DNA of 64,000 bases, taken from the IMG/VR virus record IMGVR_UViG_3300020810_001156, positions 1 to 64,000 of that record. One strand, written 5' to 3'. The first letter of the stretch is position 1. Every line of letters begins with the position of its first letter. The notes under the pieces are model-generated. The model was not told the origin of the DNA and ran no database searches. It saw only the letters and a list, made by a program, of their open reading frames with translations. Below, piece by piece: positions 6,310 through 41,890 of the stretch. The position numbers were made by a program, and so were the translations under genes.

Positions 6310-7452
6310 ATGAACTTCAAAAAAACCAAAGAACAATTAACGATAAAGAAATCAGCAAGAATATTTGCCGAAACTTATATTAAACCAAACGCTTATTATT
6401 GGGATAATAATGAAATCTTTCCAAAGGAGTTACTACATAATGCTGGTGAGTTGGGGTTTATGGGTATTTTAATTCCAAAAGAATATGGTGGATTGGGATT
6501 GGGGTATATTGAATATGCTGATGTAATAGAAGAGATATCCAAAGTAGACCCATCTATTGGATTATCCATAGCAGCTCATAATTCATTACCATCACAACAT
6601 ATTTACAAATTTGGTACAAAAGAACAAAAAGAAAAGTGGTTACCAAAACTAGCTTCTGGTAAGTGGATTGGTAGTTGGGGATTGACTGAAGAAAATACTG
6701 GTTCTGATGCTGGAAATATGGATTGTGTAGCTGTAAAGGATGGAGATGGTTGGCTGATAAATGGTGTAAAGAAATTTATTACACATGGTAAATCATCCGA
6801 TATTACAGTGGTAGTTGTGAGAACTGGTGATAGAGGAGATTCGCATGGAATGACTGCATTTGTGGTTGAAAGAGGAACTAGAGGGTTTTCCTCAGGTAAA
6901 GTAGAAACAAAAATGGGAATGAGAGCATCTGAAACTGCTGAAATGGTATTTAAAGATTGTTGGATTTCTGATGAAAATAGATTGGGAGAAATCGGTGAGG
7001 GGTTTATCCAATCAATGAAAATATTAGATGGTGGTAGAATATCAATAGCTGCACTATCTTTGGGGATAGCTAAAGGGGCTTATGAATGTGCTTTAAATTA
7101 CTCAAATAAAAGAGTACAATTTGGTAAACCAATTAGTTCATTCCAATCCGTTGGATTTAAATTAGCTGATATGGCTACCGAAATAGAAGCATCGGAATTA
7201 CTGATTCAGAAAGCATCTATTGAAAAGAGCACTAAGTTATCAGCTATGTGTAAGATGTATGCATCTGAAGTTTGTGTTAAGATAACTAATGAAGCTATGC
7301 AGATTTTGGGTGGATATGGATTTGTAAAAGGTGAATATCCAGTAGAAAGGTTTTTAAGAGATTCCAAACTATGTACAATCGGTGAAGGAACTACTGAAAT
7401 TCAAAAATTAGTAATTTTTAGAAAAATAAACAATGAAAGTAGGAAAGTATAA
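6310..7452 (+). CDS. acyl-CoA dehydrogenase
   Basis: GSWGLTEENTGSDAG, WLINGVKKFITHG, KMGMRASET, RVQFGKPI, QILGGYGF and TIGEGTTEIQ motifs. Confidence 0.95.
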   Translation: MNFKKTKEQLTIKKSARIFAETYIKPNAYYWDNNEIFPKELLHNAGELGFMGILIPKEYGGLGLGYIEYADVIEEISKVDPSIGLSIAAHNSLPSQHIYKFGTKEQKEKWLPKLASGKWIGSWGLTEENTGSDAGNMDCVAVKDGDGWLINGVKKFITHGKSSDITVVVVRTGDRGDSHGMTAFVVERGTRGFSSGKVETKMGMRASETAEMVFKDCWISDENRLGEIGEGFIQSMKILDGGRISIAALSLGIAKGAYECALNYSNKRVQFGKPISSFQSVGFKLADMATEIEASELLIQKASIEKSTKLSAMCKMYASEVCVKITNEAMQILGGYGFVKGEYPVERFLRDSKLCTIGEGTTEIQKLVIFRKINNESRKV

Positions 7453-9657: not shown

Positions 9658-10728
9658 ATGAATTACGCACTAACTTACGATGATATTCAATTAGTACCAG
9701 CTTTTTCGAATATCAAATCAAGACAAAATATCAAACTTCATACGATGTTGAGTGAAAGATATGGATTATTAAATCCTATCGTAGCTTCACCAATGGATAC
9801 AGTTTGTGAGTTTGAAATGGCTTACAAAATGGCTGAATTGGGTGGAGTTGGGTGTATTCACCGATTTATGAGTATCAAAGAACAAAGAGATATCGTAGAG
9901 AGGTTGTATGAAGCAATCTATGCCGATGAATTTGGTATTGCTGAACAATGGGGTGTAATGTACGATGATTGGCATGGTGAAATCAAAGCCGTACCTATCA
10001 TGGCTGCTATTGGAGTTCAAAATGAAGATAAGGATAGAGCTTCGGCATTGGTTGAAGCTGGTGCAAATGTTTTACTGATTGATGTGGCTCATGGAGACCA
10101 CCAAAATGTGTTAGATATGATTCATTGGTGTGTAACTCAAGATGATTTTCAAAATGTAGATATCATAGCTGGAAATATTGCAACTGCAGAGGCAGCAGAG
10201 TTACTCCAAACTTATGGAGTACATGGTTTGAGAGTTGGAATTGGTGGAGGTTCACTTTGTACAACGAGAATTAAAACTGGGTTTGGTGTTCCAAATGTAA
10301 CTTCATTAGAGGATATCGCTAGGGTATCGAATGTACCTATTATGGCTGATGGTGGTTTGAGAACTTCTGGTGATATCTCAAAAGCACTAGCAGTTGGAGC
10401 TGATTGTGTAATGTTGGGTTCACTATTAGCTGGAACTGATGAAGCGCCTGGTCAAATTGTTGAAACTCCAAACGGATTGTACAAAAGATATAGAGGTTCA
10501 GCATCATTGGAAACTAAAGTAACTCACGGACAAGCTGCGAGAAATGTTGAAGGTGAAGCAACAACAATTCCATATAAAGGTGGAGTTAAATTTATTATCA
10601 ATGGATTATTGGATGGAGTGAAATCAGCCCTAAGTTATGCTGGGGCTAGTGATTTAAAAAATTATAATCCAAAATATGTAGTAGTTACCAATGCTGGACA
10701 GAATGAAGCTAAACCGCATCTTTTATGA
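9658..10728 (+). CDS. guaB: IMP dehydrogenase / GMP reductase family protein, no CBS domains
   Basis: ALTYDDIQLVP, ASPMDTV, IDVAHG, GNIAT, GIGGGSLCTTR (catalytic Cys), ADGG; IMPDH versus GMPR not resolved. Confidence 0.85.
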   Translation: MNYALTYDDIQLVPAFSNIKSRQNIKLHTMLSERYGLLNPIVASPMDTVCEFEMAYKMAELGGVGCIHRFMSIKEQRDIVERLYEAIYADEFGIAEQWGVMYDDWHGEIKAVPIMAAIGVQNEDKDRASALVEAGANVLLIDVAHGDHQNVLDMIHWCVTQDDFQNVDIIAGNIATAEAAELLQTYGVHGLRVGIGGGSLCTTRIKTGFGVPNVTSLEDIARVSNVPIMADGGLRTSGDISKALAVGADCVMLGSLLAGTDEAPGQIVETPNGLYKRYRGSASLETKVTHGQAARNVEGEATTIPYKGGVKFIINGLLDGVKSALSYAGASDLKNYNPKYVVVTNAGQNEAKPHLL

Positions 10729-12365: not shown

Positions 12366-12548
12366 ATGATAATTAAACCCCTTACTAATATGGACCAACG
12401 AATGAAAGATAGACTTTGGAAAGAAAGAGAAATGAGAGCCGAATTGGCTCATGAAGATAGAAGTTGGAGAAACCAACAACAAATGAGAGTGATTCATAGA
12501 AGAAGAGCTCAAGTTCAATTGGAAAGATTAAACCAAAAATCTCAATGA
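12366..12548 (+). CDS. hypothetical basic protein
   Basis: ORF track. Confidence 0.6.
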   Translation: MIIKPLTNMDQRMKDRLWKEREMRAELAHEDRSWRNQQQMRVIHRRRAQVQLERLNQKSQ

Positions 12549-12937
12549 GTACCTTTCCTACCGATTTCCAAAAAGTAGTAGATTTCTTAAAATACTACGA
12601 TGTGAATGTAATGATTGATTCAGTTAGTTGTTATATTAAAACCGATGATGAACAAACCATTTGCATTCACCACAATTATAACTTAGAGAAAAACGGATTA
12701 ATTACCCTACTTCACGAAGCTGGACATGTATTACAATCCAATGATAATGGAGTGTGTAATCATTACAAAAATGTGGATGATATGGAAAATCCCAAAGAGT
12801 ACAATATGTACCAATTTATGAATGAGTTGGATGCTTGGAATAGAGGTGAGGAATTGATTGAAATGTTGGACTTGGATGTTGATTCAAATAGATTCCATAA
12901 ACAAAGAGAGGAAGCGCTCTTAACTTATTATGTTTAG
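12545..12937 (+). CDS. HExxH zincin-like metallopeptidase (ImmA/IrrE-like)
   Basis: LITLLHEAGH followed by E.DAW..G. Confidence 0.6.
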   Translation: MSTFPTDFQKVVDFLKYYDVNVMIDSVSCYIKTDDEQTICIHHNYNLEKNGLITLLHEAGHVLQSNDNGVCNHYKNVDDMENPKEYNMYQFMNELDAWNRGEELIEMLDLDVDSNRFHKQREEALLTYYV

Positions 12938-13124
12938 AGAACCCGAAGTATTAGAAAACGAAAATGGAGTATCTACTCCTGTATTTTTAAAGAGTGGATT
13001 CTTTGATGAAACTTTCTTACATAAGGAACGAAACCCTATTGAAGATGTAGAAGAGATGCTAGAGGAATATTCCGATTTAATCCATTGGGTCTATATTCCT
13101 TTGTGGAGATTTAGAACCGAATAA
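12930..13124 (+). CDS. hypothetical protein
   Basis: ORF track. Confidence 0.6.
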   Translation: MFREPEVLENENGVSTPVFLKSGFFDETFLHKERNPIEDVEEMLEEYSDLIHWVYIPLWRFRTE

Positions 13125-13172: not shown

Positions 13173-13949
13173 ATGACTTTTTGGGAATGGAAAAATGAGG
13201 TATCTCAAGTTAAGAGTAAATTGGATATTCGAAAGGAGAGAGTAGAAGAATTCTTTAAAAATGAAGAATGGAGAAACCACCAGAAATTATCCGAATGGGC
13301 TATAAAGAATGATATAAAGTATCTTAGAAAGTACGATGCATTTGAGTATGAGTATGAATACAAATATATCATGTACTATGAATACCAAGTCCGTACAGCG
13401 TTACCACCAATAGAACCAAAAGAGAATCATTTTTGGTGTAGGTATTGTAGAGATGAAAAACCACAATCTGAAGTTAGGGGTACTTCAATATGTACTCCAT
13501 GTGCTAAACAATATCGAAGAGATAATTACGCTGAAAAAGAACGAAATTCAATGAGAGAAAGATATCATTCAGACCCAATACATAGAATTGGTTCTGTTAT
13601 AAAAGCTCATATCAATCATATCTTAAATAATAAATTTGATAAGATAAGAGATGAAACATGGGAAGAAACTGTTGGATTGAGTAAGCAGGCATTTTTAGAT
13701 TATATTTTAGAACAATGTGAACCTCATTGGAATATGGATAATTACGGAACGGAATGGGTCATTCAACATATCATTCCAAGAGATTGGGCTGAAGTAGAAT
13801 CTGATGCATATCTATTGAACTATTATAAGAACTTAATGCCGTGGGGTTTTTCTGAGAACGCAGCTCTTAAAAATAGAATCGAACCTTCTCAATTAAATGA
13901 ATGGCATTACACTAATGAGAGAATTCAACAATTGATTCAAAACCAATAG
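13173..13949 (+). CDS. HNH-type endonuclease-like protein with Cys4 zinc finger
   Basis: CRYC...CTPC, then MDNYGTEWVIQHIIP...YYKNLMP...EN, like the W.NYG.WHIDHIIP...NLQPLW..N free-standing HNH family. Confidence 0.65.
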   Translation: MTFWEWKNEVSQVKSKLDIRKERVEEFFKNEEWRNHQKLSEWAIKNDIKYLRKYDAFEYEYEYKYIMYYEYQVRTALPPIEPKENHFWCRYCRDEKPQSEVRGTSICTPCAKQYRRDNYAEKERNSMRERYHSDPIHRIGSVIKAHINHILNNKFDKIRDETWEETVGLSKQAFLDYILEQCEPHWNMDNYGTEWVIQHIIPRDWAEVESDAYLLNYYKNLMPWGFSENAALKNRIEPSQLNEWHYTNERIQQLIQNQ

Positions 13950-13954
13950 TAAAG

Positions 13955-13984
13955 AATCCACCCCAAAAAGGTGGGTTTTCTTTT
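13955..13984 (+). terminator. intrinsic terminator
   Basis: AATCCACC/GGTGGGTT hairpin followed by TTCTTTT. Confidence 0.7.
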
Positions 13985-14045
13985 GCGCCAAATCCAAATG
14001 AACTCGAAGTTGGAAAACCAAGATAAAAATAATATAGCTAAGAAT
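13985..14045. repeat. imperfect ~60-bp repeat, copy 1 (copy 2 at 16530-16585)
   Basis: GCGC-AAATC..AAC-CGAAG-TGGA..AAG-TAAAAATAA-ATAGCTAAGAAT shared; each copy follows a terminator. Confidence 0.65.
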
Positions 14046-14141
14046 AGTAGTAATCAATATAGTATAGGTATAGAAGATATATAAGATAAAGAATAAGAAG
14101 ATATAATAGTTATATTAAATAACCCCAAATACCACCCAGCT

Positions 14142-14297
14142 ATGATAACTCAGAAAGAACTCATCCATATGTACTATAAGATATGTGATATAGAAGAGGA
14201 ATTGTATGTTAACCCCTTCCCCAACGATAAGATACTCCTCCTGACCGAAGATTTAAAAAAGACTATCATCAATAGAGTAGATGAAGCTCCTAAATAA
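14142..14297 (+). CDS. small hypothetical protein (51 aa)
   Basis: MITQKELIHMYYKICDIEEELY...; not in ORF track. Confidence 0.45.
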   Translation: MITQKELIHMYYKICDIEEELYVNPFPNDKILLLTEDLKKTIINRVDEAPK

Positions 14298-14426
14298 TCA
14301 AACCATCAACACTCTTTTACCATAAGAGTTAGGATAATGACACCCCCATATAATTAACTATACCGATATACACCTATAAGCATATATTCTAATACTTATA
14401 TACAAATAGGTTTATTTCTATCTCTA

Positions 14427-14462
14427 TCCCACTACCTACCACTTTCCCCCACTTTTCCCCAC
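14427..14462 (-). promoter_or_regulatory. four GTGG boxes at exact 10-bp period (MraZ-operator-like array)
   Basis: Minus strand reads GTGGGG-AAAA-GTGGGG-GAAA-GTGGTA-GGTA-GTGGGA. Confidence 0.55.
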
Positions 14463-14665
14463 CTAATAACATACTACTAAATAATTAGCTAAGAAAAGTA
14501 CTCTATCACCATGGTAGAGGGGCTTGTGTGTGTGTTGGTATCGCTGCAAATTTTCCTGGCCCTGATTCTGATACTATCTCCGAGCCACCTTACCCCTTTA
14601 ACCCCTAAATCCCATAAGCGCTTAGAGACAATCCCTGAGAGAGCTTGGAAATTGGGCTGTAAGAG

Positions 14666-14697
14666 CTAATATACAAAAAAGAAATGAGATATACAAG
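14666..14697 (-). promoter_or_regulatory. Bacteroidota sigma-A-type promoter, minus strand, firing into non-coding DNA
   Basis: Reverse complement: CTTG-N20-TATATTAG. Confidence 0.7.
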
Positions 14698-14707
14698 CCA
14701 TATGGCC

Positions 14708-14810
14708 TGACAATTCGTCATTGTGGATAACTTTTTTTATTAACACCAAAATGTGGATAACTTTTCAAGCGGCTGTTGATAACTTTTTAGCTTGATTTGA
14801 CAAATTGTCA
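14708..14810. promoter_or_regulatory. three co-oriented DnaA boxes flanked by two TGACAAnTTGTCA-type palindromes
   Basis: TGTGGATAA at 14722 and 14752, TGTTGATAA at 14774, each followed by CTTTT; palindromes at 14708-14720 (imperfect) and 14798-14810. Confidence 0.75.
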
Positions 14811-14819
14811 TACAAATAA

Positions 14820-14851
14820 TTTGGATATATCATTTATTTTTCGTATCTTTA
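14820..14851 (+). promoter_or_regulatory. Bacteroidota sigma-A-type promoter upstream of candidate sRNA
   Basis: TTTG 14820-14823, TATCTTTA 14844-14851. Confidence 0.65.
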
Positions 14852-14854
14852 AGG

Positions 14855-14925
14855 GTGGCTGGGTGGGAGTAGTATAGGGGAAAACAGCGAATACTGCCGC
14901 AGGAATTAGATTCACCGGCAGTCAC
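14855..14925 (+). ncRNA. candidate structured small RNA
   Basis: Own promoter; closing stem GTGGCTG/CAGTCAC plus GGTG/CACC; inner stem GTAGTAT/ATACTGC; no ORF. Confidence 0.4.
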
Positions 14926-14959
14926 GACAAAAAAAATATTAAAAAAAAGTGAGAAAAGG

Positions 14960-15006
14960 CTTGCATGATTCAAATTAATTTCGTATATTAGTACTGTAAT
15001 TGAGAG
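14960..15006 (+). promoter_or_regulatory. Bacteroidota sigma-A-type promoter with TACTGTAATTGAGAG tail
   Basis: CTTG 14960-14963, TATATTAG 14984-14991. Confidence 0.8.
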
Positions 15007-15029
15007 ATAAGTTAAAACCTAAAACAAAT

Positions 15030-15605
15030 ATGAGTAAGAAATTCAAATTTAAATTAAACGGAATGGAGTTCTCCCTTCCTATTAAACACCTAAAGACAAC
15101 TGATTGGAATGGTAACCCTACCAAGCCTGAGATTTCGATTAACCACTCAGCTGGGTCAAACCTTCTGAAACAATATGTGAAAGCGAAGTATCCCAAAGTT
15201 ACGGTGATGGTTTCATCATCTATCTTCTCTATGGGTAACTCAGTTGATGTGTATATTACTGATGAGGTTGGTAATCCAGTTGATAAATCTATTGTAGAAG
15301 ATGTTCAAGCTTTCGGTAACCAATTTGTTTATGGTCAGTTCAACGGAATGATTGATATGTATGAACACAAAGAGTGTGGTGCTACCTCTGAAAGTGGTAC
15401 TACTATCACTGGTAACATCAAATACCTTCACGTTCAGAATCGTGCGAAGCACGCATCTCTTCCTGATGTATGTAGAATGTTGGTTGAGATGACAACTACT
15501 GAGAACTATGTGTTTGGAAAAGTAAGTGTTGAAAAAGCTATTGAACATGCTAAGAGTTTCGGCGCTAGTGAGAATAATATTAACAAAGCTCTAAAATTGA
15601 TATAA
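15030..15605 (+). CDS. LPD29 (large polyvalent protein-associated domain 29)-like protein
   Basis: LLKQYVKAKYPKVTVMVSSSIFSMGNSVDVY...F.YGQFNGMIDMYE matches the LPD29 pattern. Confidence 0.7.
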   Translation: MSKKFKFKLNGMEFSLPIKHLKTTDWNGNPTKPEISINHSAGSNLLKQYVKAKYPKVTVMVSSSIFSMGNSVDVYITDEVGNPVDKSIVEDVQAFGNQFVYGQFNGMIDMYEHKECGATSESGTTITGNIKYLHVQNRAKHASLPDVCRMLVEMTTTENYVFGKVSVEKAIEHAKSFGASENNINKALKLI

Positions 15606-15606
15606 T

Positions 15607-15759
15607 ATGAGTAAGTATGAGAATGGGTATCTACCTAAGATTCAGTATTGGCAATCCCAATACGATTTGGCTAAGGAAGCTGGAAATAATTCAGCGATGT
15701 TGAAGTGTTTGGATAAGTTAACTTACTTTGTCCAACGCCAAAAAGAGGTGTACGGATAA
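15607..15759 (+). CDS. small hypothetical protein (50 aa)
   Basis: MSKYENGYLPKIQYWQ... Confidence 0.6.
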   Translation: MSKYENGYLPKIQYWQSQYDLAKEAGNNSAMLKCLDKLTYFVQRQKEVYG

Positions 15760-15785
15760 AAAAATTGAAAAAAGTTTGAAATAAA

Positions 15786-15828
15786 TTTGGATATATCATT
15801 TTTATTTCGTATATTAGTAGTGTAATTG
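15786..15828 (+). promoter_or_regulatory. Bacteroidota sigma-A-type promoter upstream of tRNA
   Basis: TTTG 15786-15789, TATATTAG 15810-15817, TAGTGTAATTG tail. Confidence 0.8.
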
Positions 15829-15871
15829 GTTGAGGTGATTGAGATGTACTCTAGCCCTAACTAACAAATTT

Positions 15872-15943
15872 GCGGGAGAAGCGTTAAGAGAAACGTGCCG
15901 GGCTTCCAGCTCGGAGAAGGTGGGGCGGTTCCATCCTCCCGCT
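15872..15943 (+). tRNA. tRNA-Gly(UCC) with non-canonical D and T loops
   Basis: Acceptor GCGGGAG/CTCCCGC; D stem GCGT/ACGT; anticodon stem CCGGG/CTCGG with loop CTTCCAG; T stem GGTGG/CCATC; U73; no encoded CCA. Confidence 0.75.
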
Positions 15944-16009
15944 CAACTGATGATGAGATTAAGGATAACTCGGCTCCGAATGGGGAGGTAGCATCATCAA
16001 ACACATATT

Positions 16010-16297
16010 ATGGGAGAACAAGTAGCAAACAATAGAGAAATGCAGGAAGTGATGTATCTCCGCCAAGAAGATGGAAAGTGGTACATCCTATCCGAACCTA
16101 AATCACCTGGCCTGGTGAAGAAGGAATACTTACCTATTGGCAATCGGCTTGTATATCCTAAGAAGTGGGGAAGGAAGAAAGCTGCTGAGGTACTACTATC
16201 CGCACTTATATCAGATTCGGAAAAGGTGTGTGAAAAAGCTAATGAGAGGTTGGAAGTACTAAGAGGATTAACTGCTGAGGTTAGTGAATGGAAGTAA
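16010..16297 (+). CDS. hypothetical protein
   Basis: ORF track. Confidence 0.7.
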   Translation: MGEQVANNREMQEVMYLRQEDGKWYILSEPKSPGLVKKEYLPIGNRLVYPKKWGRKKAAEVLLSALISDSEKVCEKANERLEVLRGLTAEVSEWK

Positions 16298-16467
16298 TGA
16301 CTTATTATCAGATACGGAAGAAAGTAGAAGAATCAGGTAAGTCACTGGAAGTCAGAGAGTTAGCTAAGCAGTTACAACTTCAACTATCGGAACCTGGAGC
16401 TAATATCCCATTTAAAGATGCATATGAAATGGCCTATAATGAGATACTCCTACAAAGGGTTTACTAA
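16297..16467 (+). CDS. small hypothetical protein (56 aa)
   Basis: TAATG overlap; MTYYQIRKKVEESG... Confidence 0.55.
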   Translation: MTYYQIRKKVEESGKSLEVRELAKQLQLQLSEPGANIPFKDAYEMAYNEILLQRVY

Positions 16468-16500
16468 ATAAGGGTTATAGTAGTGGGTTGAGGTTACTAA

Positions 16501-16528
16501 GGGAGTGAGGAATCGCTCCCTTTTTTTA
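16501..16528 (+). terminator. intrinsic terminator
   Basis: GGGAGTGA-GGAA-TCGCTCCC followed by T7. Confidence 0.85.
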
Positions 16529-16529
16529 T

Positions 16530-16585
16530 GCGCAAATCTCAAACCGAAGCTGGACAAATAAGCTAAAAATAAAATAGCTAAGAAT
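16530..16585. repeat. imperfect ~60-bp repeat, copy 2 (copy 1 at 13985-14045)
   Basis: Shared core ends in TAAAAATAAAATAGCTAAGAAT. Confidence 0.65.
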
Positions 16586-16630
16586 CCCTATACTATACAT
16601 AAGAGAATATATACTATACTTATACTCACT

Positions 16631-16780
16631 ATGACAACAAAGAAAACACATAGTATATACCACAACACTCAGAACACTATAAAGTGTTACCATTGTAATT
16701 GGGAATGGGAGAGTGGGGCTTTAACCCTATACGAATGCCCCCATTGTGGAAAAGTGGCTGAAGGTATTTCCCAGCTCTAG
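16631..16780 (+). CDS. small zinc-ribbon protein (49 aa)
   Basis: KCYHCNWEW...YECPHCGK (CxxC...CxxC). Confidence 0.6.
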   Translation: MTTKKTHSIYHNTQNTIKCYHCNWEWESGALTLYECPHCGKVAEGISQL

Positions 16781-16990
16781 CGAGCGTAAGCGAGCGGAGG
16801 AGACAGGGGAGACCCCCCACCCCCCTTAGACAGGTTTCTTGTTGCTACCGGATTTGGAAACGCTCTCAAGCCGGGTCTGGTCCGTTTTCGCCTCGAGCCC
16901 GGTTTTTTCCGGTATAGAAAAAATACCCTTTGATACCCCTTCGGTGTATCCTAAGAGGATATCAAACTCGGATTTGTGAAGGGAGCCATT
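16779..16990. other. GC-rich non-coding structured island (candidate packaging/terminus or origin site)
   Basis: AGCGAGCG x2, AGACAGG x2, GGGGAGACCCCCCACCCCCC, CCGGG/CCCGG stem, UUCG hairpin; contrasts with AT-rich surroundings. Confidence 0.45.
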
Positions 16991-17009
16991 TTTATTTTAC
17001 CTCATTTTA

Positions 17010-17041
17010 TTTGGAATTCTCATTTATTTTTTGTATATTTG
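17010..17041 (+). promoter_or_regulatory. Bacteroidota sigma-A-type promoter
   Basis: TTTG 17010-17013, TATATTTG 17034-17041. Confidence 0.8.
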
Positions 17042-17064
17042 TATAAACTAAAATTTAAGAAGAT

Positions 17065-20179: not shown

Positions 20180-22900
20180 TTAGAATCTATAAGTTAAACT
20201 TGCGTTCCAAGTTCTACCAAATCCGAACCATACTGAGTTTCTAACATCAACACCATTCCATGTAGTTGAACTAGCATCTGCATGAATGTTAGAGTTAGAT
20301 TCTGCAATATAAACAGCATCGAATAAGTTGTTGATATTAGCTCTCGCAGTAAATTTACCAAACTTACCAGTCAATCCTAAATCAACTAAACCATACGATG
20401 GTAATTTCATCGCACCTAAGTTATCAGGTTGTGTAAACTCCGAATCAGTAATAGAGTAGTCAGCGTATAATCCATCTACAAATCTATAATCTACATCAAC
20501 ATTAAATCTTTTACCTAACTTCTGGTCTACTCCTAAAACAGCTACGAATTGTGCAGCATCACCAACTTTAGCATCTTTAAGGTAAAGAGTACCTGTTCCG
20601 ATTGATTGTTGGTTATCATCAAATAATTCTGCTTCGAAATCTTTAGTATATCTCCAATCACCGATTGATAACATACCTCTGAATCTCGTTGCGTTTGATA
20701 ATTGATACTTACCTTCAAATTCGATACCATTATGTACTACATCGATATCTCTGAATTGTGCAAATCCATCTACACCTTGTTGGTTAGATAAACTTCTACT
20801 AACAAATCTATTACCCCAAGTTGTTGTGTAAGCGTTAATGTTAAACGATACATCTGAACCAATAAAACCATAACCCAATTCAAATGAACGAATTTCTTCG
20901 TTTTGTAAATCTGGATTAATTTCATTAGCAAAGTTAGGGAATACTGCATCAAACTGAGGTTGTCTTGAAATTACACCTGCGTTAAAGAACACATTTGATT
21001 TCTCATCGATATTGTAGTTAGCACCACCCTTTACATATCCACCACCTTGGTTTTGAACATCTGATTCTGGGTTACCTGGTTGGTCAAAATAATCGATTCT
21101 TTGGAATGCTTGGTTAGATAAACCTGCTTGTACTACTGCAGTTAATTTATCTCCCTGATATTCTACTAAACCATTAAGACCTTGCCATCCAACTTTACCA
21201 ACATTGTAGTAATCAATCTTCGGACCGTTTAGACCTGTATTCTGAAAAGGATTTGCTTCAACTAAAGTATTGATGATTTGACCGTTAGAGTTTTTGTTAC
21301 CCGTTGAGTAATAACCATCTAATCCCATTAAATCATTAAGAACTCTATAATGATAACCAGTATAGCTTCTTAAATCAACACCAATAGATGTTTTGAATTT
21401 ACCAAATTGTCCTTCTAAGTTTGAGATACCACCAACCCAGTTGTGTGAGTTCATAGATGCTCTTCTTACCAATACTGTTCTATTTACATTAGAATCTCTG
21501 AATCCATTCGAACCAATAAGTTGTCCTTGGAATGCTGAGATATCACCTGTATATCCTTCAGTAGTTGATTGGTTAGCTGCAACGATTGCATCGAAATCGA
21601 TGAATCCATTTGCATCTCTTGAACCTCTACCATTTTCTAAGTAGTGTTCTGTAAGGTCTTTTCTGAAAGGTAAGATATCAGTTGCAGCTGCACGATAGTT
21701 GTTACCACGAGGACCTGTACCACCACCTCTACCAGCAGAACCATATAATGATGTTGCTAATTTAAGGTTATCTGAAATGTTCCAATCCCAGTTGAAAGTT
21801 GCTAATGGTTTGTTGTAGAAGTTTCTTCTTAAAGAATACTCTTCTCCATTTAGTGTACCACCATTAGAATTCCATCTCTGGTCAATTCCTTCTTCACCAA
21901 AGTTTTGGTAATCTCTAATAGATACCCAAACATCTCTTTGATGGTGCCATTGACCTGCACCTAAGAATGAAAAGTTCAATTCATGGTCTGAACCTTCCGG
22001 TGCGTAACCAACTGCAGCGAAGTAAGTCCATCCTTCACCTGAAGTGTTGTAAACATATCCGTTACCAGCCCACTTAGATAATAAGAAAGATGATGCCCAT
22101 CCTTTATCATTCTTACCTGTGTTGTAAGAAACTCCTGTTTTGGTGTATCCATCGTTACCAACCATTTGAATTACTTTACCACCTTCAGTTTTCTGTGCGG
22201 CTTTAGTAAAAATGGAAACAGTTCCCCCAACTGAAGGAACTGCCAACTTAGATGCACCTAAACCTCTTTGGATTTGGATACCTGATGCTACATCGGTTAA
22301 ACCTTGCCAGTTACTCCAATATACCCATCCGTTCTCCATATCGTTAACGGGTTGTCCGTTAATAAGGAAAGATGTATTTCTTTGGTCAAATCCTCTAAGA
22401 GAGATTCTTGAATCACCATAACCACCACCTTGTTTAGTAGCATAAACCCCTGGAGTTTTATTCATAATTTCAGGGAATTCTTGGTTACCAACCTTTAGAG
22501 AAATCTCAGCTGGTGATATCGATGATACCGCTACTGGAGTTTCTCTTACTTTTGCTACATCAATTACCCCTGATGTAACCACCACTTCAGCTAACTGATT
22601 TAATGCAGTTGGTAAATTTACAATCATATCGTTCACAGCAACAACCTCAGTTGTTTGGAAACCAATAAAAGAAATTACTAAAGTGTTACCAGCGGATGCC
22701 CCAGAAATAGAAAAGAGACCATCAAAATCGGTTGTTGTACCATTTTGGGTCCCTTTGATTACTACCGTTGCGCCTGGTAGGGGTTCATTCGTTTCTGCAT
22801 CTACCACTGTTCCAGTGATTTGTGCGAAACCGGTCATTGAGGTGAAAACCATCAATAACCCAATCAAAAATTGCTTCATAATTGCTTGATTTTTGTTCAT
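20180..22900 (-). CDS. TonB-dependent outer-membrane receptor
   Basis: Signal peptide (FAQ), CarboxypepD-like domain (ITGTVVD..EPLPGATV), plug (SLRGF...INGQP), barrel ending ...SLTYRF. Confidence 0.9.
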   Translation of the reverse strand: MNKNQAIMKQFLIGLLMVFTSMTGFAQITGTVVDAETNEPLPGATVVIKGTQNGTTTDFDGLFSISGASAGNTLVISFIGFQTTEVVAVNDMIVNLPTALNQLAEVVVTSGVIDVAKVRETPVAVSSISPAEISLKVGNQEFPEIMNKTPGVYATKQGGGYGDSRISLRGFDQRNTSFLINGQPVNDMENGWVYWSNWQGLTDVASGIQIQRGLGASKLAVPSVGGTVSIFTKAAQKTEGGKVIQMVGNDGYTKTGVSYNTGKNDKGWASSFLLSKWAGNGYVYNTSGEGWTYFAAVGYAPEGSDHELNFSFLGAGQWHHQRDVWVSIRDYQNFGEEGIDQRWNSNGGTLNGEEYSLRRNFYNKPLATFNWDWNISDNLKLATSLYGSAGRGGGTGPRGNNYRAAATDILPFRKDLTEHYLENGRGSRDANGFIDFDAIVAANQSTTEGYTGDISAFQGQLIGSNGFRDSNVNRTVLVRRASMNSHNWVGGISNLEGQFGKFKTSIGVDLRSYTGYHYRVLNDLMGLDGYYSTGNKNSNGQIINTLVEANPFQNTGLNGPKIDYYNVGKVGWQGLNGLVEYQGDKLTAVVQAGLSNQAFQRIDYFDQPGNPESDVQNQGGGYVKGGANYNIDEKSNVFFNAGVISRQPQFDAVFPNFANEINPDLQNEEIRSFELGYGFIGSDVSFNINAYTTTWGNRFVSRSLSNQQGVDGFAQFRDIDVVHNGIEFEGKYQLSNATRFRGMLSIGDWRYTKDFEAELFDDNQQSIGTGTLYLKDAKVGDAAQFVAVLGVDQKLGKRFNVDVDYRFVDGLYADYSITDSEFTQPDNLGAMKLPSYGLVDLGLTGKFGKFTARANINNLFDAVYIAESNSNIHADASSTTWNGVDVRNSVWFGFGRTWNASLTYRF

Positions 22901-34614: not shown

Positions 34615-34646
34615 TTTGGAATTGTAAAATATTTTTCGTATATTTG
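34615..34646 (+). promoter_or_regulatory. Bacteroidota sigma-A-type promoter
   Basis: TTTG 34615-34618, TATATTTG 34639-34646. Confidence 0.8.
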
Positions 34647-34669
34647 TGGATAAACATCAAATAGAATAT

Positions 34670-41850: not shown

Positions 41851-41890
41851 TGACAAGTTGTCATACAAAATGAAATGGTATGGATTTGGT
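41851..41890 (+). promoter_or_regulatory. palindromic operator TGACAAGTTGTCA plus GG-N10-G element upstream of hsp20
   Basis: TGACAAnTTGTCATACAAA also at 14798; TGGTATGGATTTGGT at 41876-41890. Confidence 0.45.

What the first reader, a model, noticed from the sequence alone, without database searches (positions are those of the whole stretch)
13950..17050. 3-kb low-coding control hub: candidate origin/terminus region that also engages host cell-cycle proteins
Seen together: an AT-rich tract (about 14020-14125), duplicated 60-bp elements, four 10-bp-phased GTGG boxes, three DnaA boxes, palindromes, divergent promoters into non-coding DNA, an aberrant tRNA and a GC-rich structured island. This stands out in an otherwise gene-packed genome. 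Inference: a DnaA-assisted phage origin and/or a DNA sponge that titrates DnaA and MraZ together, uncoupling host replication and division during infection.
Basis: partly seen in the sequence, partly recalled or inferred. Interest (0 to 1): 0.75.

Follow-up and report, generated by a model that had tools for sequence, protein, structure and literature searches.

The report
Phage control hub mimicking host operators
A real, conserved 3-kb control region of an uncultured giant phage of flavobacteria carries copies of the DNA sites that control the host's cell-division operon and a new tRNA-glycine look-alike RNA, but nothing shows it is a replication origin.

Summary
Window 13950-17050 has the lowest ORF coverage of the 252.6-kb phage genome (53% against 95%). 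Nearly every listed element is real and conserved in related metagenomic phages.

The duplicated elements are of two kinds: a host sigma-A-type promoter family, and a 60-bp element present only twice. Three DnaA-type boxes lie between a divergent promoter pair, flanked by a 13-bp palindrome. A four-unit GTGG array with a 10-bp period is unique in the genome.

The same two site types lie side by side at the mraZ promoter of Flavobacteriales, and the phage encodes neither MraZ nor DnaA. Host-operator mimicry is therefore supported by sequence, but binding is untested.

The "aberrant tRNA" is a covariation-proven cloverleaf RNA (43 distinct sequences, 99.8% of cells paired). It is absent from Rfam and is not a canonical tRNA. 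It keeps every known glycyl-tRNA-synthetase identity determinant and sits 5-20 nt upstream of varied small genes.

The origin/terminus reading has no support from GC skew and lacks several origin hallmarks. The sponge idea is untested.

My best reading is an early regulatory hub gated by host cell-cycle regulators.

The parts
13958..13984 (+). Terminator-like hairpin plus T-run that ends the upstream endonuclease VII-like gene
   Evidence: scan; sequence read
13985..14045 (+). 60-bp element, copy A (core ...CGAAGTTGGAAAAC...AAAAATAATATAGCTAAGAAT). Candidate promoter or regulatory site of a non-sigma-A class, upstream of ORF51.
   Evidence: Only two copies in the genome. Conserved in relatives, which also carry both copies.
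14020..14125 (+). AT-rich (81%), purine-rich tract between element A and ORF51
14142..14297 (+). ORF51, a small conserved protein gene of unknown function
   Evidence: The frame and length are kept in L007, L130 and L135, with synonymous and conservative changes
14429..14462 (-). Four GTGG units with an exact 10-bp period: an array that resembles MraZ-binding repeats
   Evidence: Unique in the genome and absent from shuffles; kept in 15 or more related loci. Fits the published repeat definition. Resembles host mraZ promoters.
14463..14665 (.). Block A: conserved non-coding block of conserved length (about 215 nt), with a (GT)n run and G-run patches on the minus strand. No consensus RNA fold.
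14667..14697 (-). Leftward sigma-A-type promoter (-7 box TATATTAG, -33 TTG)
   Evidence: Inverted copy of the promoter family (I1-I3). Conserved in 9 relatives.
14708..14720 (.). 13-bp palindrome TGACAATTCGTCA, just upstream of the leftward promoter
14722..14787 (-). Three direct DnaA-type boxes (14-mers at 14722, 14752 and 14774). They read AAAAGTTATC[C/A]ACA on the minus strand.
   Evidence: A cluster of 2-5 boxes is kept between the divergent promoters in all 9 aligned relatives. The 14-mer is enriched in Bacteroidota chromosomes.
14798..14810 (.). 13-bp palindrome TGACAAATTGTCA, just upstream of the rightward promoter
   Evidence: Further copies lie at 41851 and 244545; the latter sits at the same distance upstream of a promoter.
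14820..14851 (+). Rightward sigma-A-type promoter (-7 box TATCTTTA)
14853..14869 (+). Motif of four G-runs at the predicted 5' end of the rightward transcript, followed by about 85 nt of variable non-coding spacer
   Evidence: Four G-runs kept in 11 relatives although the bases between the runs differ. Only 5 such motifs in the genome, 2 of them in this hub.
14960..14991 (+). Promoter of the 191-aa gene. It belongs to a subclass with the conserved start GTACTGTAATTGAGAG.
15030..15605 (+). 191-aa protein, LPD29-like, widely conserved in related phages
15786..15817 (+). Promoter that drives the cloverleaf leader
15872..15944 (+). tRNA-Gly-derived cloverleaf RNA: 7-bp acceptor stem, 5-bp D-like arm, 6-bp arm with loop NUCCA, 5-bp T-like arm with loop GGCRGUU
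   Evidence: Covariation. Single copy in the genome. Covered by metatranscriptome contigs.
15945..16002 (+). Optional hairpin insert between the cloverleaf and ORF95
   Evidence: Fold. A metatranscriptome contig joins 15944 to 16003. Most relatives lack the insert.
16010..16467 (+). ORF95 and the overlapping ORF59, small conserved proteins of unknown function
16499..16528 (+). Terminator-like hairpin plus T-run
16530..16585 (+). 60-bp element, copy B, upstream of ORF49
16631..16780 (+). ORF49, a zinc-ribbon-like small protein (CxxC...CxxC)
16781..17005 (+). Block B: conserved non-coding block with the invariant patch GGTTTCTTGT, a terminator-like hairpin at 16870-16908 and a hairpin at 16932-16950
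17010..17041 (+). Next sigma-A-type promoter (perfect -7 box TATATTTG)
   Evidence: consensus from PMC9723704

Best explanation
The stretch is a conserved, promoter-dense early-expression and regulatory hub of an uncultured jumbo phage of about 253 kb. The host is probably a member of the Flavobacteriales.

Layout. The hub is built of short cassettes, each headed by a promoter of the host sigma-A type (-33 TTTG, -7 TAnnTTTG).

Centre of the hub. A divergent promoter pair encloses a 120-bp spacer. That spacer carries three DnaA-type boxes, flanked on each side by a 13-bp palindrome. The leftward arm runs through a 215-nt non-coding block into a four-unit GTGG array with a 10-bp period.

Mimicry of the host. 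The boxes and the array are the same two site types that lie side by side at the host mraZ (division and cell wall) promoter. The phage encodes neither protein. The inferred mechanism is therefore that host DnaA (or whichever host factor reads the AAAAGTTATCMACA box) and host MraZ bind here, and so gate the divergent early transcripts according to the host's cell-cycle state. Titration of those proteins at high phage copy number is a possible by-product.

The cloverleaf. One kilobase to the right, a promoter drives a cloverleaf RNA derived from tRNA-Gly(UCC). It is a portable 5' leader placed 5-20 nt upstream of the start codon of various small genes. It has lost the canonical D and T loops but keeps all GlyRS identity determinants. 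It probably acts by mimicking tRNA-Gly, either as a processing or stabilising element or as a GlyRS-binding operator.

Shown: the elements exist, are non-random and are conserved; the RNA fold is real; the sites match host operators in sequence.
Inferred: which proteins bind, and every functional consequence.
For: Promoters and genome setting
- The promoter family matches the flavobacterial sigma-A consensus.
- A SusC-like TonB-dependent receptor gene and helicase relatives point to a Bacteroidota host.
- This is the lowest-coding window of the genome.

Boxes, palindromes and GTGG array
- The divergent promoters, a cluster of 2-5 boxes and, in most relatives, the palindromes are kept in the same order in 9 relatives, while the sequence between them varies.
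- The GTGG array is unique in the genome. It is kept in 15 or more loci, including distant relatives in which its orientation relative to the 191-aa gene is reversed.
- It fits the definition of MraZ-binding repeats.
- Of 30 Flavobacteriales mraZ loci, 22 have GTGG-N6-GTGG upstream of mraZ. Of these, 20 have a third repeat. In 16 a TTATYAACA-type box ends 2-4 nt upstream of the first GTGG, and 5 more carry the box within 45 nt.
- The phage lacks MraZ, DnaA and the DnaA C-terminal domain.
- The 14-mer TGTGGATAACTTTT occurs 11-27 times in four Bacteroidota genomes of about 5 Mb (3 times in a fifth, a 0.7-Mb assembly), against 0-1 for its reversed control.
- A DnaA box overlaps the -7 box of another phage promoter at 34645.

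Cloverleaf
- 23 pairs; 99.8% of 977 cells paired; 15 pairs with compensatory changes; slid controls give 45-51%.
- Invariant G1-C72, C2-G71, G3-C70, U73, C35 and C36. These are the published determinants.
- It sits 5-20 nt upstream of the ATG of at least five unrelated small genes.
- Metatranscriptome contigs cover it.
Against: - No binding data exist for any protein.
- The host is unknown.
- The commonest box in the phage family is TTATCAACA. It departs from the strict DnaA consensus at one position, so its reader at the host mraZ promoter may not be DnaA.
- The palindromes point to a further, unidentified regulator, which could be phage-encoded.
- No metatranscriptome contig was laid on 14489-14869, so the leftward transcript is not shown. 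Strain variants branch at the edges of that gap and the tool warns that holes prove nothing.
- Block A has no detectable RNA fold and no assigned role.
- The role of the cloverleaf is inferred only from its position and its conserved nucleotides.
Confidence: 0.5

Rival explanations
1. The hub is a replication origin helped by DnaA and primed by transcription. Divergent transcription would unwind the DnaA-box spacer, and the G-rich starts of the transcripts would form stable R-loops that prime DNA synthesis. This would resemble T4 oriF/oriG, ColE1 RNA II or the mitochondrial LSP-CSBII system.
For: - Dense cluster of consensus DnaA boxes between AT-rich divergent promoters.
- In five sampled host genomes, direct pairs of such boxes within 5-40 nt occur only 0-1 times per genome.
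- A four-G-run motif sits at the rightward start and is kept in 11 relatives. G-run patches lie on the sense strand of the leftward arm.
- Locally the + strand is C-rich at 14-15 kb.
- The AT-rich tract is in the top 0.5% of windows.
- The region is the least coding part of the genome.
Against: - Cumulative GC skew rises steadily with no turning point here. Almost all genes are on one strand, so skew may carry little information.
- No DnaA-trio or 13-mer-type unwinding element lies next to the boxes (sequence read).
- None of the ORFs compared with Pfam or PHROGs matched an initiator, helicase-loader or primase family; the 191-aa protein gave only weak LPD29-type matches and ORF49 only weak zinc-ribbon matches.
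- Box number and orientation vary among relatives, which suits regulatory sites better than an ordered origin complex.
- More distant relatives have no box cluster near the 191-aa gene.
Confidence: 0.2
2. The hub is a DNA sponge. At high phage copy number the boxes and the GTGG array would titrate host DnaA and MraZ, uncoupling host replication from division.
For: - Both site types match the host operator types that control the dcw operon.
- The phage has no gene for either protein.
- The array and the box cluster are conserved.
Against: - There is only one array and three boxes per genome.
- Their fixed placement around promoters points to local regulation.
- MraZ is a repressor of its own operon, so titrating it would derepress division genes rather than block division.
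- No phenotype data exist.
Confidence: 0.1
3. The sites are read by phage-encoded regulators rather than host proteins, and their likeness to host operators is coincidence or shared ancestry of the DNA only.
For: - The palindrome TGACAAnTTGTCA has no known reader. It recurs at two other places in the genome, one of them at the same distance upstream of a promoter.
- Many small phage ORFs here have no assigned function.
Against: - The GTGG period and unit match the MraZ mode exactly.
- The 14-nt box is identical to the one at host mraZ promoters.
- No MraZ-like or DnaA-like fold was found in the phage by Pfam models.
Confidence: 0.12

Closest known systems
MraZ-binding repeats at the mraZ (dcw cluster) promoter
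   Same: Three or more GTGG units with a 10-bp period and A-rich spacers. A triple repeat is unique in the genome. The array closely resembles the Flavobacteriales sites.
   Different: It lies in a phage genome, has four units, and sits 215 nt downstream of a promoter rather than over one. No mraZ gene follows it. Binding is untested.
DnaA-box clusters (oriC, datA, dnaA promoter; DnaA boxes of P1 oriR and at lambda pR)
   Same: Two perfect TTATCCACA boxes plus one with a single mismatch, all direct, within 66 bp and between divergent promoters.
   Different: No DnaA-trio or unwinding element, no skew switch and no adjacent replication gene. The family consensus is TTATCAACA. The comparison with P1 and lambda rests on my own knowledge.
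Transcription-primed origins (T4 oriF/oriG, ColE1 RNA II, mitochondrial LSP-CSBII)
   Same: A promoter followed at once by G-runs on the non-template strand.
   Different: There is no evidence of R-loops or of initiation. The resemblance is recalled from knowledge, not tested.
Non-proteogenic tRNA-Gly of staphylococci (PMC7826273)
   Same: A tRNA-Gly(UCC)-type molecule that keeps the GlyRS determinants but has altered D and T arms.
   Different: Here the anticodon arm has 6 bp and a 5-nt loop, U33 is not conserved, and the RNA is embedded in an mRNA leader. The phage has no Fem-type transferase.
Viral tRNA-like elements used as processing or promoter modules (MHV68 TMERs, mascRNA; PMC4337559, PMC8457004)
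   Same: A cloverleaf inside a longer transcript, sometimes followed by a hairpin and sometimes in tandem copies.
   Different: The setting is bacterial and phage-borne, and no processing data exist.
thrS-type translational operators (tRNA mimicry in an mRNA leader)
   Same: A tRNA mimic close to the start codon.
   Different: It is a whole cloverleaf rather than an anticodon arm, the downstream genes are not synthetase genes, and the comparison rests on my own knowledge.

Membership tests
Canonical tRNA (Rfam RF00005 / ARAGORN) | Cloverleaf with a 7-bp acceptor stem, 2-nt and 1-nt connectors, and a short variable loop | tested here: met
Canonical tRNA (Rfam RF00005 / ARAGORN) | 7-nt anticodon loop with U33 | tested here: not met
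   Positions 32 and 38 covary as a pair (CG 38, UA 5). Position 33 is U in 31, A in 11 and G in 1 of 43 sequences.
Canonical tRNA (Rfam RF00005 / ARAGORN) | T-loop UUCRANY and D-loop GG | tested here: not met
   The loops are GGCRGUU and AAGAGA, and both are nearly invariant
Canonical tRNA (Rfam RF00005 / ARAGORN) | Detected by standard tools | tested here: not met
   ARAGORN at default settings finds none. Rfam finds none even at E up to 5. The element is called only at relaxed or mitochondrial settings.
Substrates of bacterial GlyRS (tRNA-Gly identity set) | G1-C72, C2-G71, U73, C35, C36 (plus purine 4 - pyrimidine 69) | tested here: met
   All are invariant in 42-43 distinct sequences; R4-Y69 holds in 41 of 42. 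Determinants as in PMC10464925 and PMC7826273.
Substrates of bacterial GlyRS (tRNA-Gly identity set) | L-shaped fold, a CCA end and actual glycylation | not testable with these tools
   The 3' tail is UC(A/U)A. A genuine phage tRNA-Gly in relative L003 has the same trailer.
MraZ-binding repeats | Three or more GTGG units with a 10-bp period | tested here: met
   Four units at 14429-14462; definition
MraZ-binding repeats | Located over the promoter of mraZ / the dcw operon | tested here: not met
   The context is phage DNA, and the genome has no mraZ
MraZ-binding repeats | Bound by MraZ | not testable with these tools
   Needs EMSA or ChIP
DnaA-dependent replication origin | Cluster of DnaA boxes | tested here: met
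DnaA-dependent replication origin | Adjacent AT-rich unwinding element with DnaA-trios | tested here: not met
   The flanks are the two promoters and the palindromes. The only TAGTAGTAA-like run lies 670 bp away at 14046.
DnaA-dependent replication origin | Strand-composition switch | tested here: inconclusive
   There is no switch, but the one-strand gene layout may mask one
DnaA-dependent replication origin | Initiation of DNA synthesis at the site | not testable with these tools
Bacteroidota sigma-A promoters | -7 box TAnnTTTG with -33 TTTG/TTG about 19-21 nt upstream | tested here: met
   Perfect at 17034-17041; one mismatch in the other four. Consensus from PMC9723704.
Bacteroidota sigma-A promoters | Mapped transcription start | not testable with these tools
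   Only direction-less metatranscriptome contigs were available

The most novel reading that the evidence does not exclude
Two readings remain open.

1. A lineage of marine jumbo phages has copied the operator logic of the host division (dcw) promoter into its own early control region. That logic is a DnaA-type box plus MraZ-binding repeats. The phage genome would then both read and, at high copy number, perturb the host's replication-division regulators.

2. The same lineage has turned a phage tRNA-Gly gene into a new class of mRNA-leader RNA. The RNA is still recognised by glycyl-tRNA synthetase. It may be charged for a non-ribosomal use, or it may act as a synthetase-gated translational operator.
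Probability: 0.25. Interest if true: 0.85.

Novelty: new variant of a known kind. Interest (0 to 1): 0.62.

Why it matters
If host MraZ and DnaA bind here, this would be, as far as my literature searches show, the first phage region found to carry MraZ-binding repeats. It would give a direct handle on how a virus senses or rewires the bacterial cell cycle.

The comparison also exposes a conserved DnaA-type box next to the MraZ repeats at the mraZ promoter of Flavobacteriales. That suggests an unrecognised link between replication and division in the hosts themselves.

The cloverleaf is a new, well-supported RNA family absent from Rfam 15. It shows a tRNA gene evolving into a leader element while keeping its synthetase identity set. 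That is directly testable with GlyRS, RNase P and reporter assays.

Tried and rejected
- DNA and protein similarity to cultured phages: no match for the region or for the 191-aa protein.
- Rfam, at gathering thresholds and at permissive E-values: nothing credible.
- ARAGORN at default settings on the window and on the whole genome: no tRNA or tmRNA.
- Remnant of the tmRNA that distant relatives carry nearby: no similarity.
- Consensus RNA structure for block 14463-14665 on either strand: none with RNAalifold on 10 sequences. Weak z-scores (-2.5 at best) on closer subsets. A 52-aa ORF in this block is not kept in relatives (sequences read).
- Single-sequence folds of 14490-14662 (minus strand) and 16778-17000: no better than shuffles.
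- GC skew as a marker of origin or terminus: uninformative or negative.
- Tying the 14-mer box to host oriC or dnaA: the clusters in Chryseobacterium and Cytophagales genomes are not next to dnaA.
- Phage-encoded MraZ, DnaA, Fem transferase or class II synthetase: none found.
- G-quadruplex enrichment genome-wide: not significant overall (5 observed against 3.9 expected), although 2 of the 5 lie in the hub.
- Metatranscriptome contigs as evidence for transcript ends: contig ends coincide with branch points between strain variants, so they cannot be read as RNA ends.

Full report
**Source and setting.** The window is the first 64 kb of a single 252,603-bp contig with 33% G+C. The contig comes from a salt-marsh metagenome (contig Ga0181598_1000003). 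IMG/VR holds it as a complete linear virus record. Nearly all genes lie on the + strand. A SusC-like TonB-dependent receptor gene with a CarboxypepD_reg domain, and a helicase closest to those of Cellulophaga phages and a crAss-like phage, point to a Bacteroidota host, probably one of the Flavobacteriales. No cultured phage shares DNA with the region, or the 191-aa protein.

- Counting ATG-ORFs of 45 aa or more, 13950-17050 is the lowest-coverage 3.1-kb window of the genome (0.53 against 0.95).
- It is not empty. It holds six small ORFs, five of them conserved in relatives.
- The AT-rich tract 14020-14125 is 81% A+T, in the top 0.5% of windows.

**The repeats are of two kinds.**
- The first is a promoter family: TTTGG, about 18 nt, then TTTCGTATATT(T/A)G. 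It has roughly 30 good copies across the genome. It matches the flavobacterial sigma-A consensus, whose -7 box is TAnnTTTG (PMC9723704). Five copies lie in the hub. One of them, at 14697-14667, is inverted, which gives a divergent pair with the copy at 14820-14851.
- The second is a 60-bp element found only twice in the genome, at 13985-14045 and 16530-16585. Each copy follows a terminator-like hairpin and precedes a small ORF (ORF51, ORF49). Both copies are kept in relatives. It looks like a promoter or control site of another class. I could not assign it.

**Relatives.** A profile of the 191-aa protein (LPD29-like) retrieved 80 metagenomic loci and 7 IMG/VR loci. They span 37% to 100% amino-acid identity. 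This made phylogenetic footprinting possible.

**The centre of the hub.** In nine relatives the order of elements is the same:
1. GTGG array
2. a block of about 215 nt
3. leftward promoter
4. palindrome (in most relatives)
5. 2-5 boxes
6. palindrome (in most relatives)
7. rightward promoter
8. G-run motif

The boxes (AAAAGTTATCAACA is the commonest form) differ in number and orientation between relatives, and the sequence between them is not conserved. The boxes themselves are therefore under selection.

- The palindrome TGACAAnTTGTCA occurs only four times in the genome. Two copies are here, each about 10 nt upstream of a -33 element; of the other two, the one at 244545 lies the same distance upstream of a promoter.
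- The rightward transcript is predicted to start with four G-runs. The runs are kept in 11 relatives although the bases between the runs change.
- The 215-nt block has conserved patches and a conserved length, but no consensus fold on either strand.

**The GTGG array.** Four GTGG units at exactly 10-bp spacing occur once in the genome and never in shuffles. Arrays of three or four units are kept in at least 15 related loci. These include distant relatives in which the array's orientation relative to the 191-aa gene is reversed. This is the published definition of MraZ-binding repeats, GTGGN6GTGGN6GTGG, which is unique to the mra promoter in Bacillus subtilis (bioRxiv 10.1101/2022.02.09.479790).

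I then fetched mraZ loci from 30 Flavobacteriales genomes and counted:
- 22 have GTGG-N6-GTGG just upstream of an MraZ-like ORF.
- 20 of those have a third repeat.
- In 16 a TTATYAACA-type box ends 2-4 nt upstream of the first GTGG, most often as AAAAGTTATCAACA.
- Five more carry the box within 45 nt.

That 14-mer is the reverse complement of the phage box TGTTGATAACTTTT. The phage hub therefore carries both site types of the host division-operon promoter. They lie on the same strand and in the same order as in the host, but about 290 bp apart. The phage has no MraZ, DnaA or DnaA C-terminal domain.

**Are the boxes DnaA boxes?** Two are the perfect consensus TTATCCACA, and five such 9-mers occur in the whole genome.
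- The 14-mer with its CTTTT flank occurs 11-27 times in four Bacteroidota genomes of about 5 Mb (3 times in a fifth, a 0.7-Mb assembly), against 0-1 for the reversed control, and the copies are clustered.
- Pairs of it occur in 111 genome stretches from many phyla.
- The clusters I checked are not next to dnaA.
- In five other Flavobacteriales genomes the 12-mer is rare, and in two of them one of the few copies lies at the mraZ promoter.
- Direct pairs are nearly absent there.

I therefore call these DnaA-type boxes. DnaA is the likeliest reader, but this is not shown. Another phage promoter, at 34631-34653, has a perfect box overlapping its -7 element, which fits a regulatory use.

**Origin or terminus?** The evidence does not favour it.
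- GC skew is positive in nearly every 1-kb bin, and the cumulative curve has no turning point here. The only local dips are at 14-15 kb and over the minus-strand receptor gene.
- No DnaA-trio or unwinding repeats adjoin the boxes.
- No replication protein was recognised among the ORFs compared with Pfam or PHROGs.
- More distant relatives have no box cluster near the 191-aa gene.

The divergent promoters, the G-rich transcript starts and the AT-rich tract are compatible with a transcription-primed origin, so I keep that rival at 0.2. My single read-laying run went to RNA runs, so DNA depth could not be examined.

**RNA evidence.** Four metatranscriptomes from the same marsh hold 32-65% of the region's sampled words.
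- Their contigs cover 13973-14469 and most of 14878-16915, including the cloverleaf.
- Nothing was laid on 14489-14869.
- Contig ends coincide with branch points between strain variants (loose ends at 14469, 15765 and 16191), and the tool warns that holes prove nothing. I therefore draw no conclusion about the leftward transcript.
- One contig joins 15944 to 16003. This shows a variant that lacks the 58-nt hairpin after the cloverleaf.
- The variant junctions at promoters suggest that cassettes are exchanged there.

**The aberrant tRNA.** Downstream of the promoter at 15786-15817 lies a leader hairpin and then a 73-nt cloverleaf at 15872-15944.
- In 15 homologues every one of 345 pair cells is a standard pair, and 13 of 23 pairs show compensatory changes. 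No shuffle out of 500 reached these values, and slid controls gave 44-55%.
- With a covariance model and further IMG/VR contigs there are 43 distinct sequences. Of their cells, 99.8% are paired and 15 pairs show compensatory changes.
- G-U pairs indicate that the constraint acts on the + strand RNA.
- The genome has a single copy. Relatives have one to three copies, often head to tail at a 77-nt period.

It is not a canonical tRNA.
- Positions 32 and 38 covary as a pair, leaving a 5-nt loop NUCCA.
- U33 is replaced in a quarter of the members.
- The D-like loop is AAGAGA and the T-like loop is GGCRGUU.

It clearly derives from tRNA-Gly(UCC).
- Distant relatives carry genuine tRNAs and a tmRNA a few kilobases downstream of their 191-aa gene.
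- The genuine tRNA-Gly(UCC) of L003 is the best real-tRNA hit of the model and has the same U73-CAA trailer.
- All known bacterial GlyRS determinants never vary: G1-C72, C2-G71, U73, C35 and C36, together with G3-C70 and purine 4 - pyrimidine 69 (PMC10464925, PMC7826273). Other stem pairs change freely.

The last copy ends 5-20 nt upstream of the ATG of at least five unrelated small genes, so it is a portable leader module. Flavobacterial mRNAs lack Shine-Dalgarno sequences, and initiation depends on local structure (PMC6847099, listed). A cloverleaf at this distance could therefore insulate or occlude the start region, be cut out by RNase P and RNase Z, or bind GlyRS. The phage has no Fem-type transferase and no class II synthetase.

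**Verdict.** The claim that the hub engages host cell-cycle proteins gains real, though purely sequence-based, support. The origin/terminus and sponge claims remain unsupported. The best reading is an early regulatory hub that borrows the operator logic of the host dcw promoter and contains a new tRNA-Gly-mimic leader RNA.

Noticed in passing
L348-L376 (Flavobacteriales mraZ loci): At host mraZ promoters a conserved AAAAGTTAT(C/T)AACA box, of DnaA-box type, sits 2-4 nt upstream of the three MraZ repeats in 16 of 22 loci. This hints at a replication-division link in the hosts themselves.
   Followed up: partly
window 34631-34653: A perfect DnaA box TGTGGATAA overlaps the -7 element of a canonical phage promoter. 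This is the classic layout for repression.
   Followed up: no
window 41851-41863; genome 244545-244557: Two further copies of the palindrome TGACAAnTTGTCA. The second lies at the same distance upstream of a promoter as the copies in the hub.
   Followed up: no
window 13173-13949: The endonuclease VII-like gene (phrog_1035) just left of the hub, together with ORF 12930-13124, is absent from the closer relative L007. There the homologue of 12545-12937 abuts the 60-bp element. This suggests a mobile insertion.
   Followed up: partly
window 20180-22900 (minus strand): The phage carries a 906-aa SusC-like TonB-dependent receptor gene, one of the very few genes on the minus strand.
   Followed up: no
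window 6310-7452 and 9658-10728: Genes of host metabolic type: an acyl-CoA dehydrogenase and an IMP dehydrogenase / GMP reductase family protein.
   Followed up: no
L002 7523-7893, L004 7306-7679, L171 6345-6728; L003 10560-12567: Distant relatives carry a tmRNA with tag peptide AVELSTMTFEDAMAFVGADLAVAA, and an array of genuine tRNAs (Met, Gly, Asn, Val, Tyr), downstream of their 191-aa gene.
   Followed up: partly
L377, L379, L380, L381, L382, L383: Unrelated viral contigs (34-49% G+C) carry triple GTGG repeats with the same core AAAGTGGGGGAAAGTGG and no mraZ downstream. MraZ-type repeats in phages may be more widespread.
   Followed up: partly
window 1457, 2238, 14991, 38694, 39088; genome 224661, 224966: A promoter subclass is followed by a conserved start of transcript, GTACTGTAATTGAGAG (seven copies).
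   Followed up: no
G002:C1:354018-354850; G005:C7:351038-352051; G001:C834:143557-144125: Chryseobacterium genomes hold arrays of 5-9 copies of TGTGGATAACTTTT spaced mostly about 110-230 nt apart, not next to dnaA.
   Followed up: no
genome 135001-140000: A 5-kb segment with 44.6% G+C in a 33% genome.
   Followed up: no
window 15765, 16191, 14469: Metatranscriptome contigs branch into different sequence at promoter or cassette borders. This suggests exchange of cassettes between strains.
   Followed up: no
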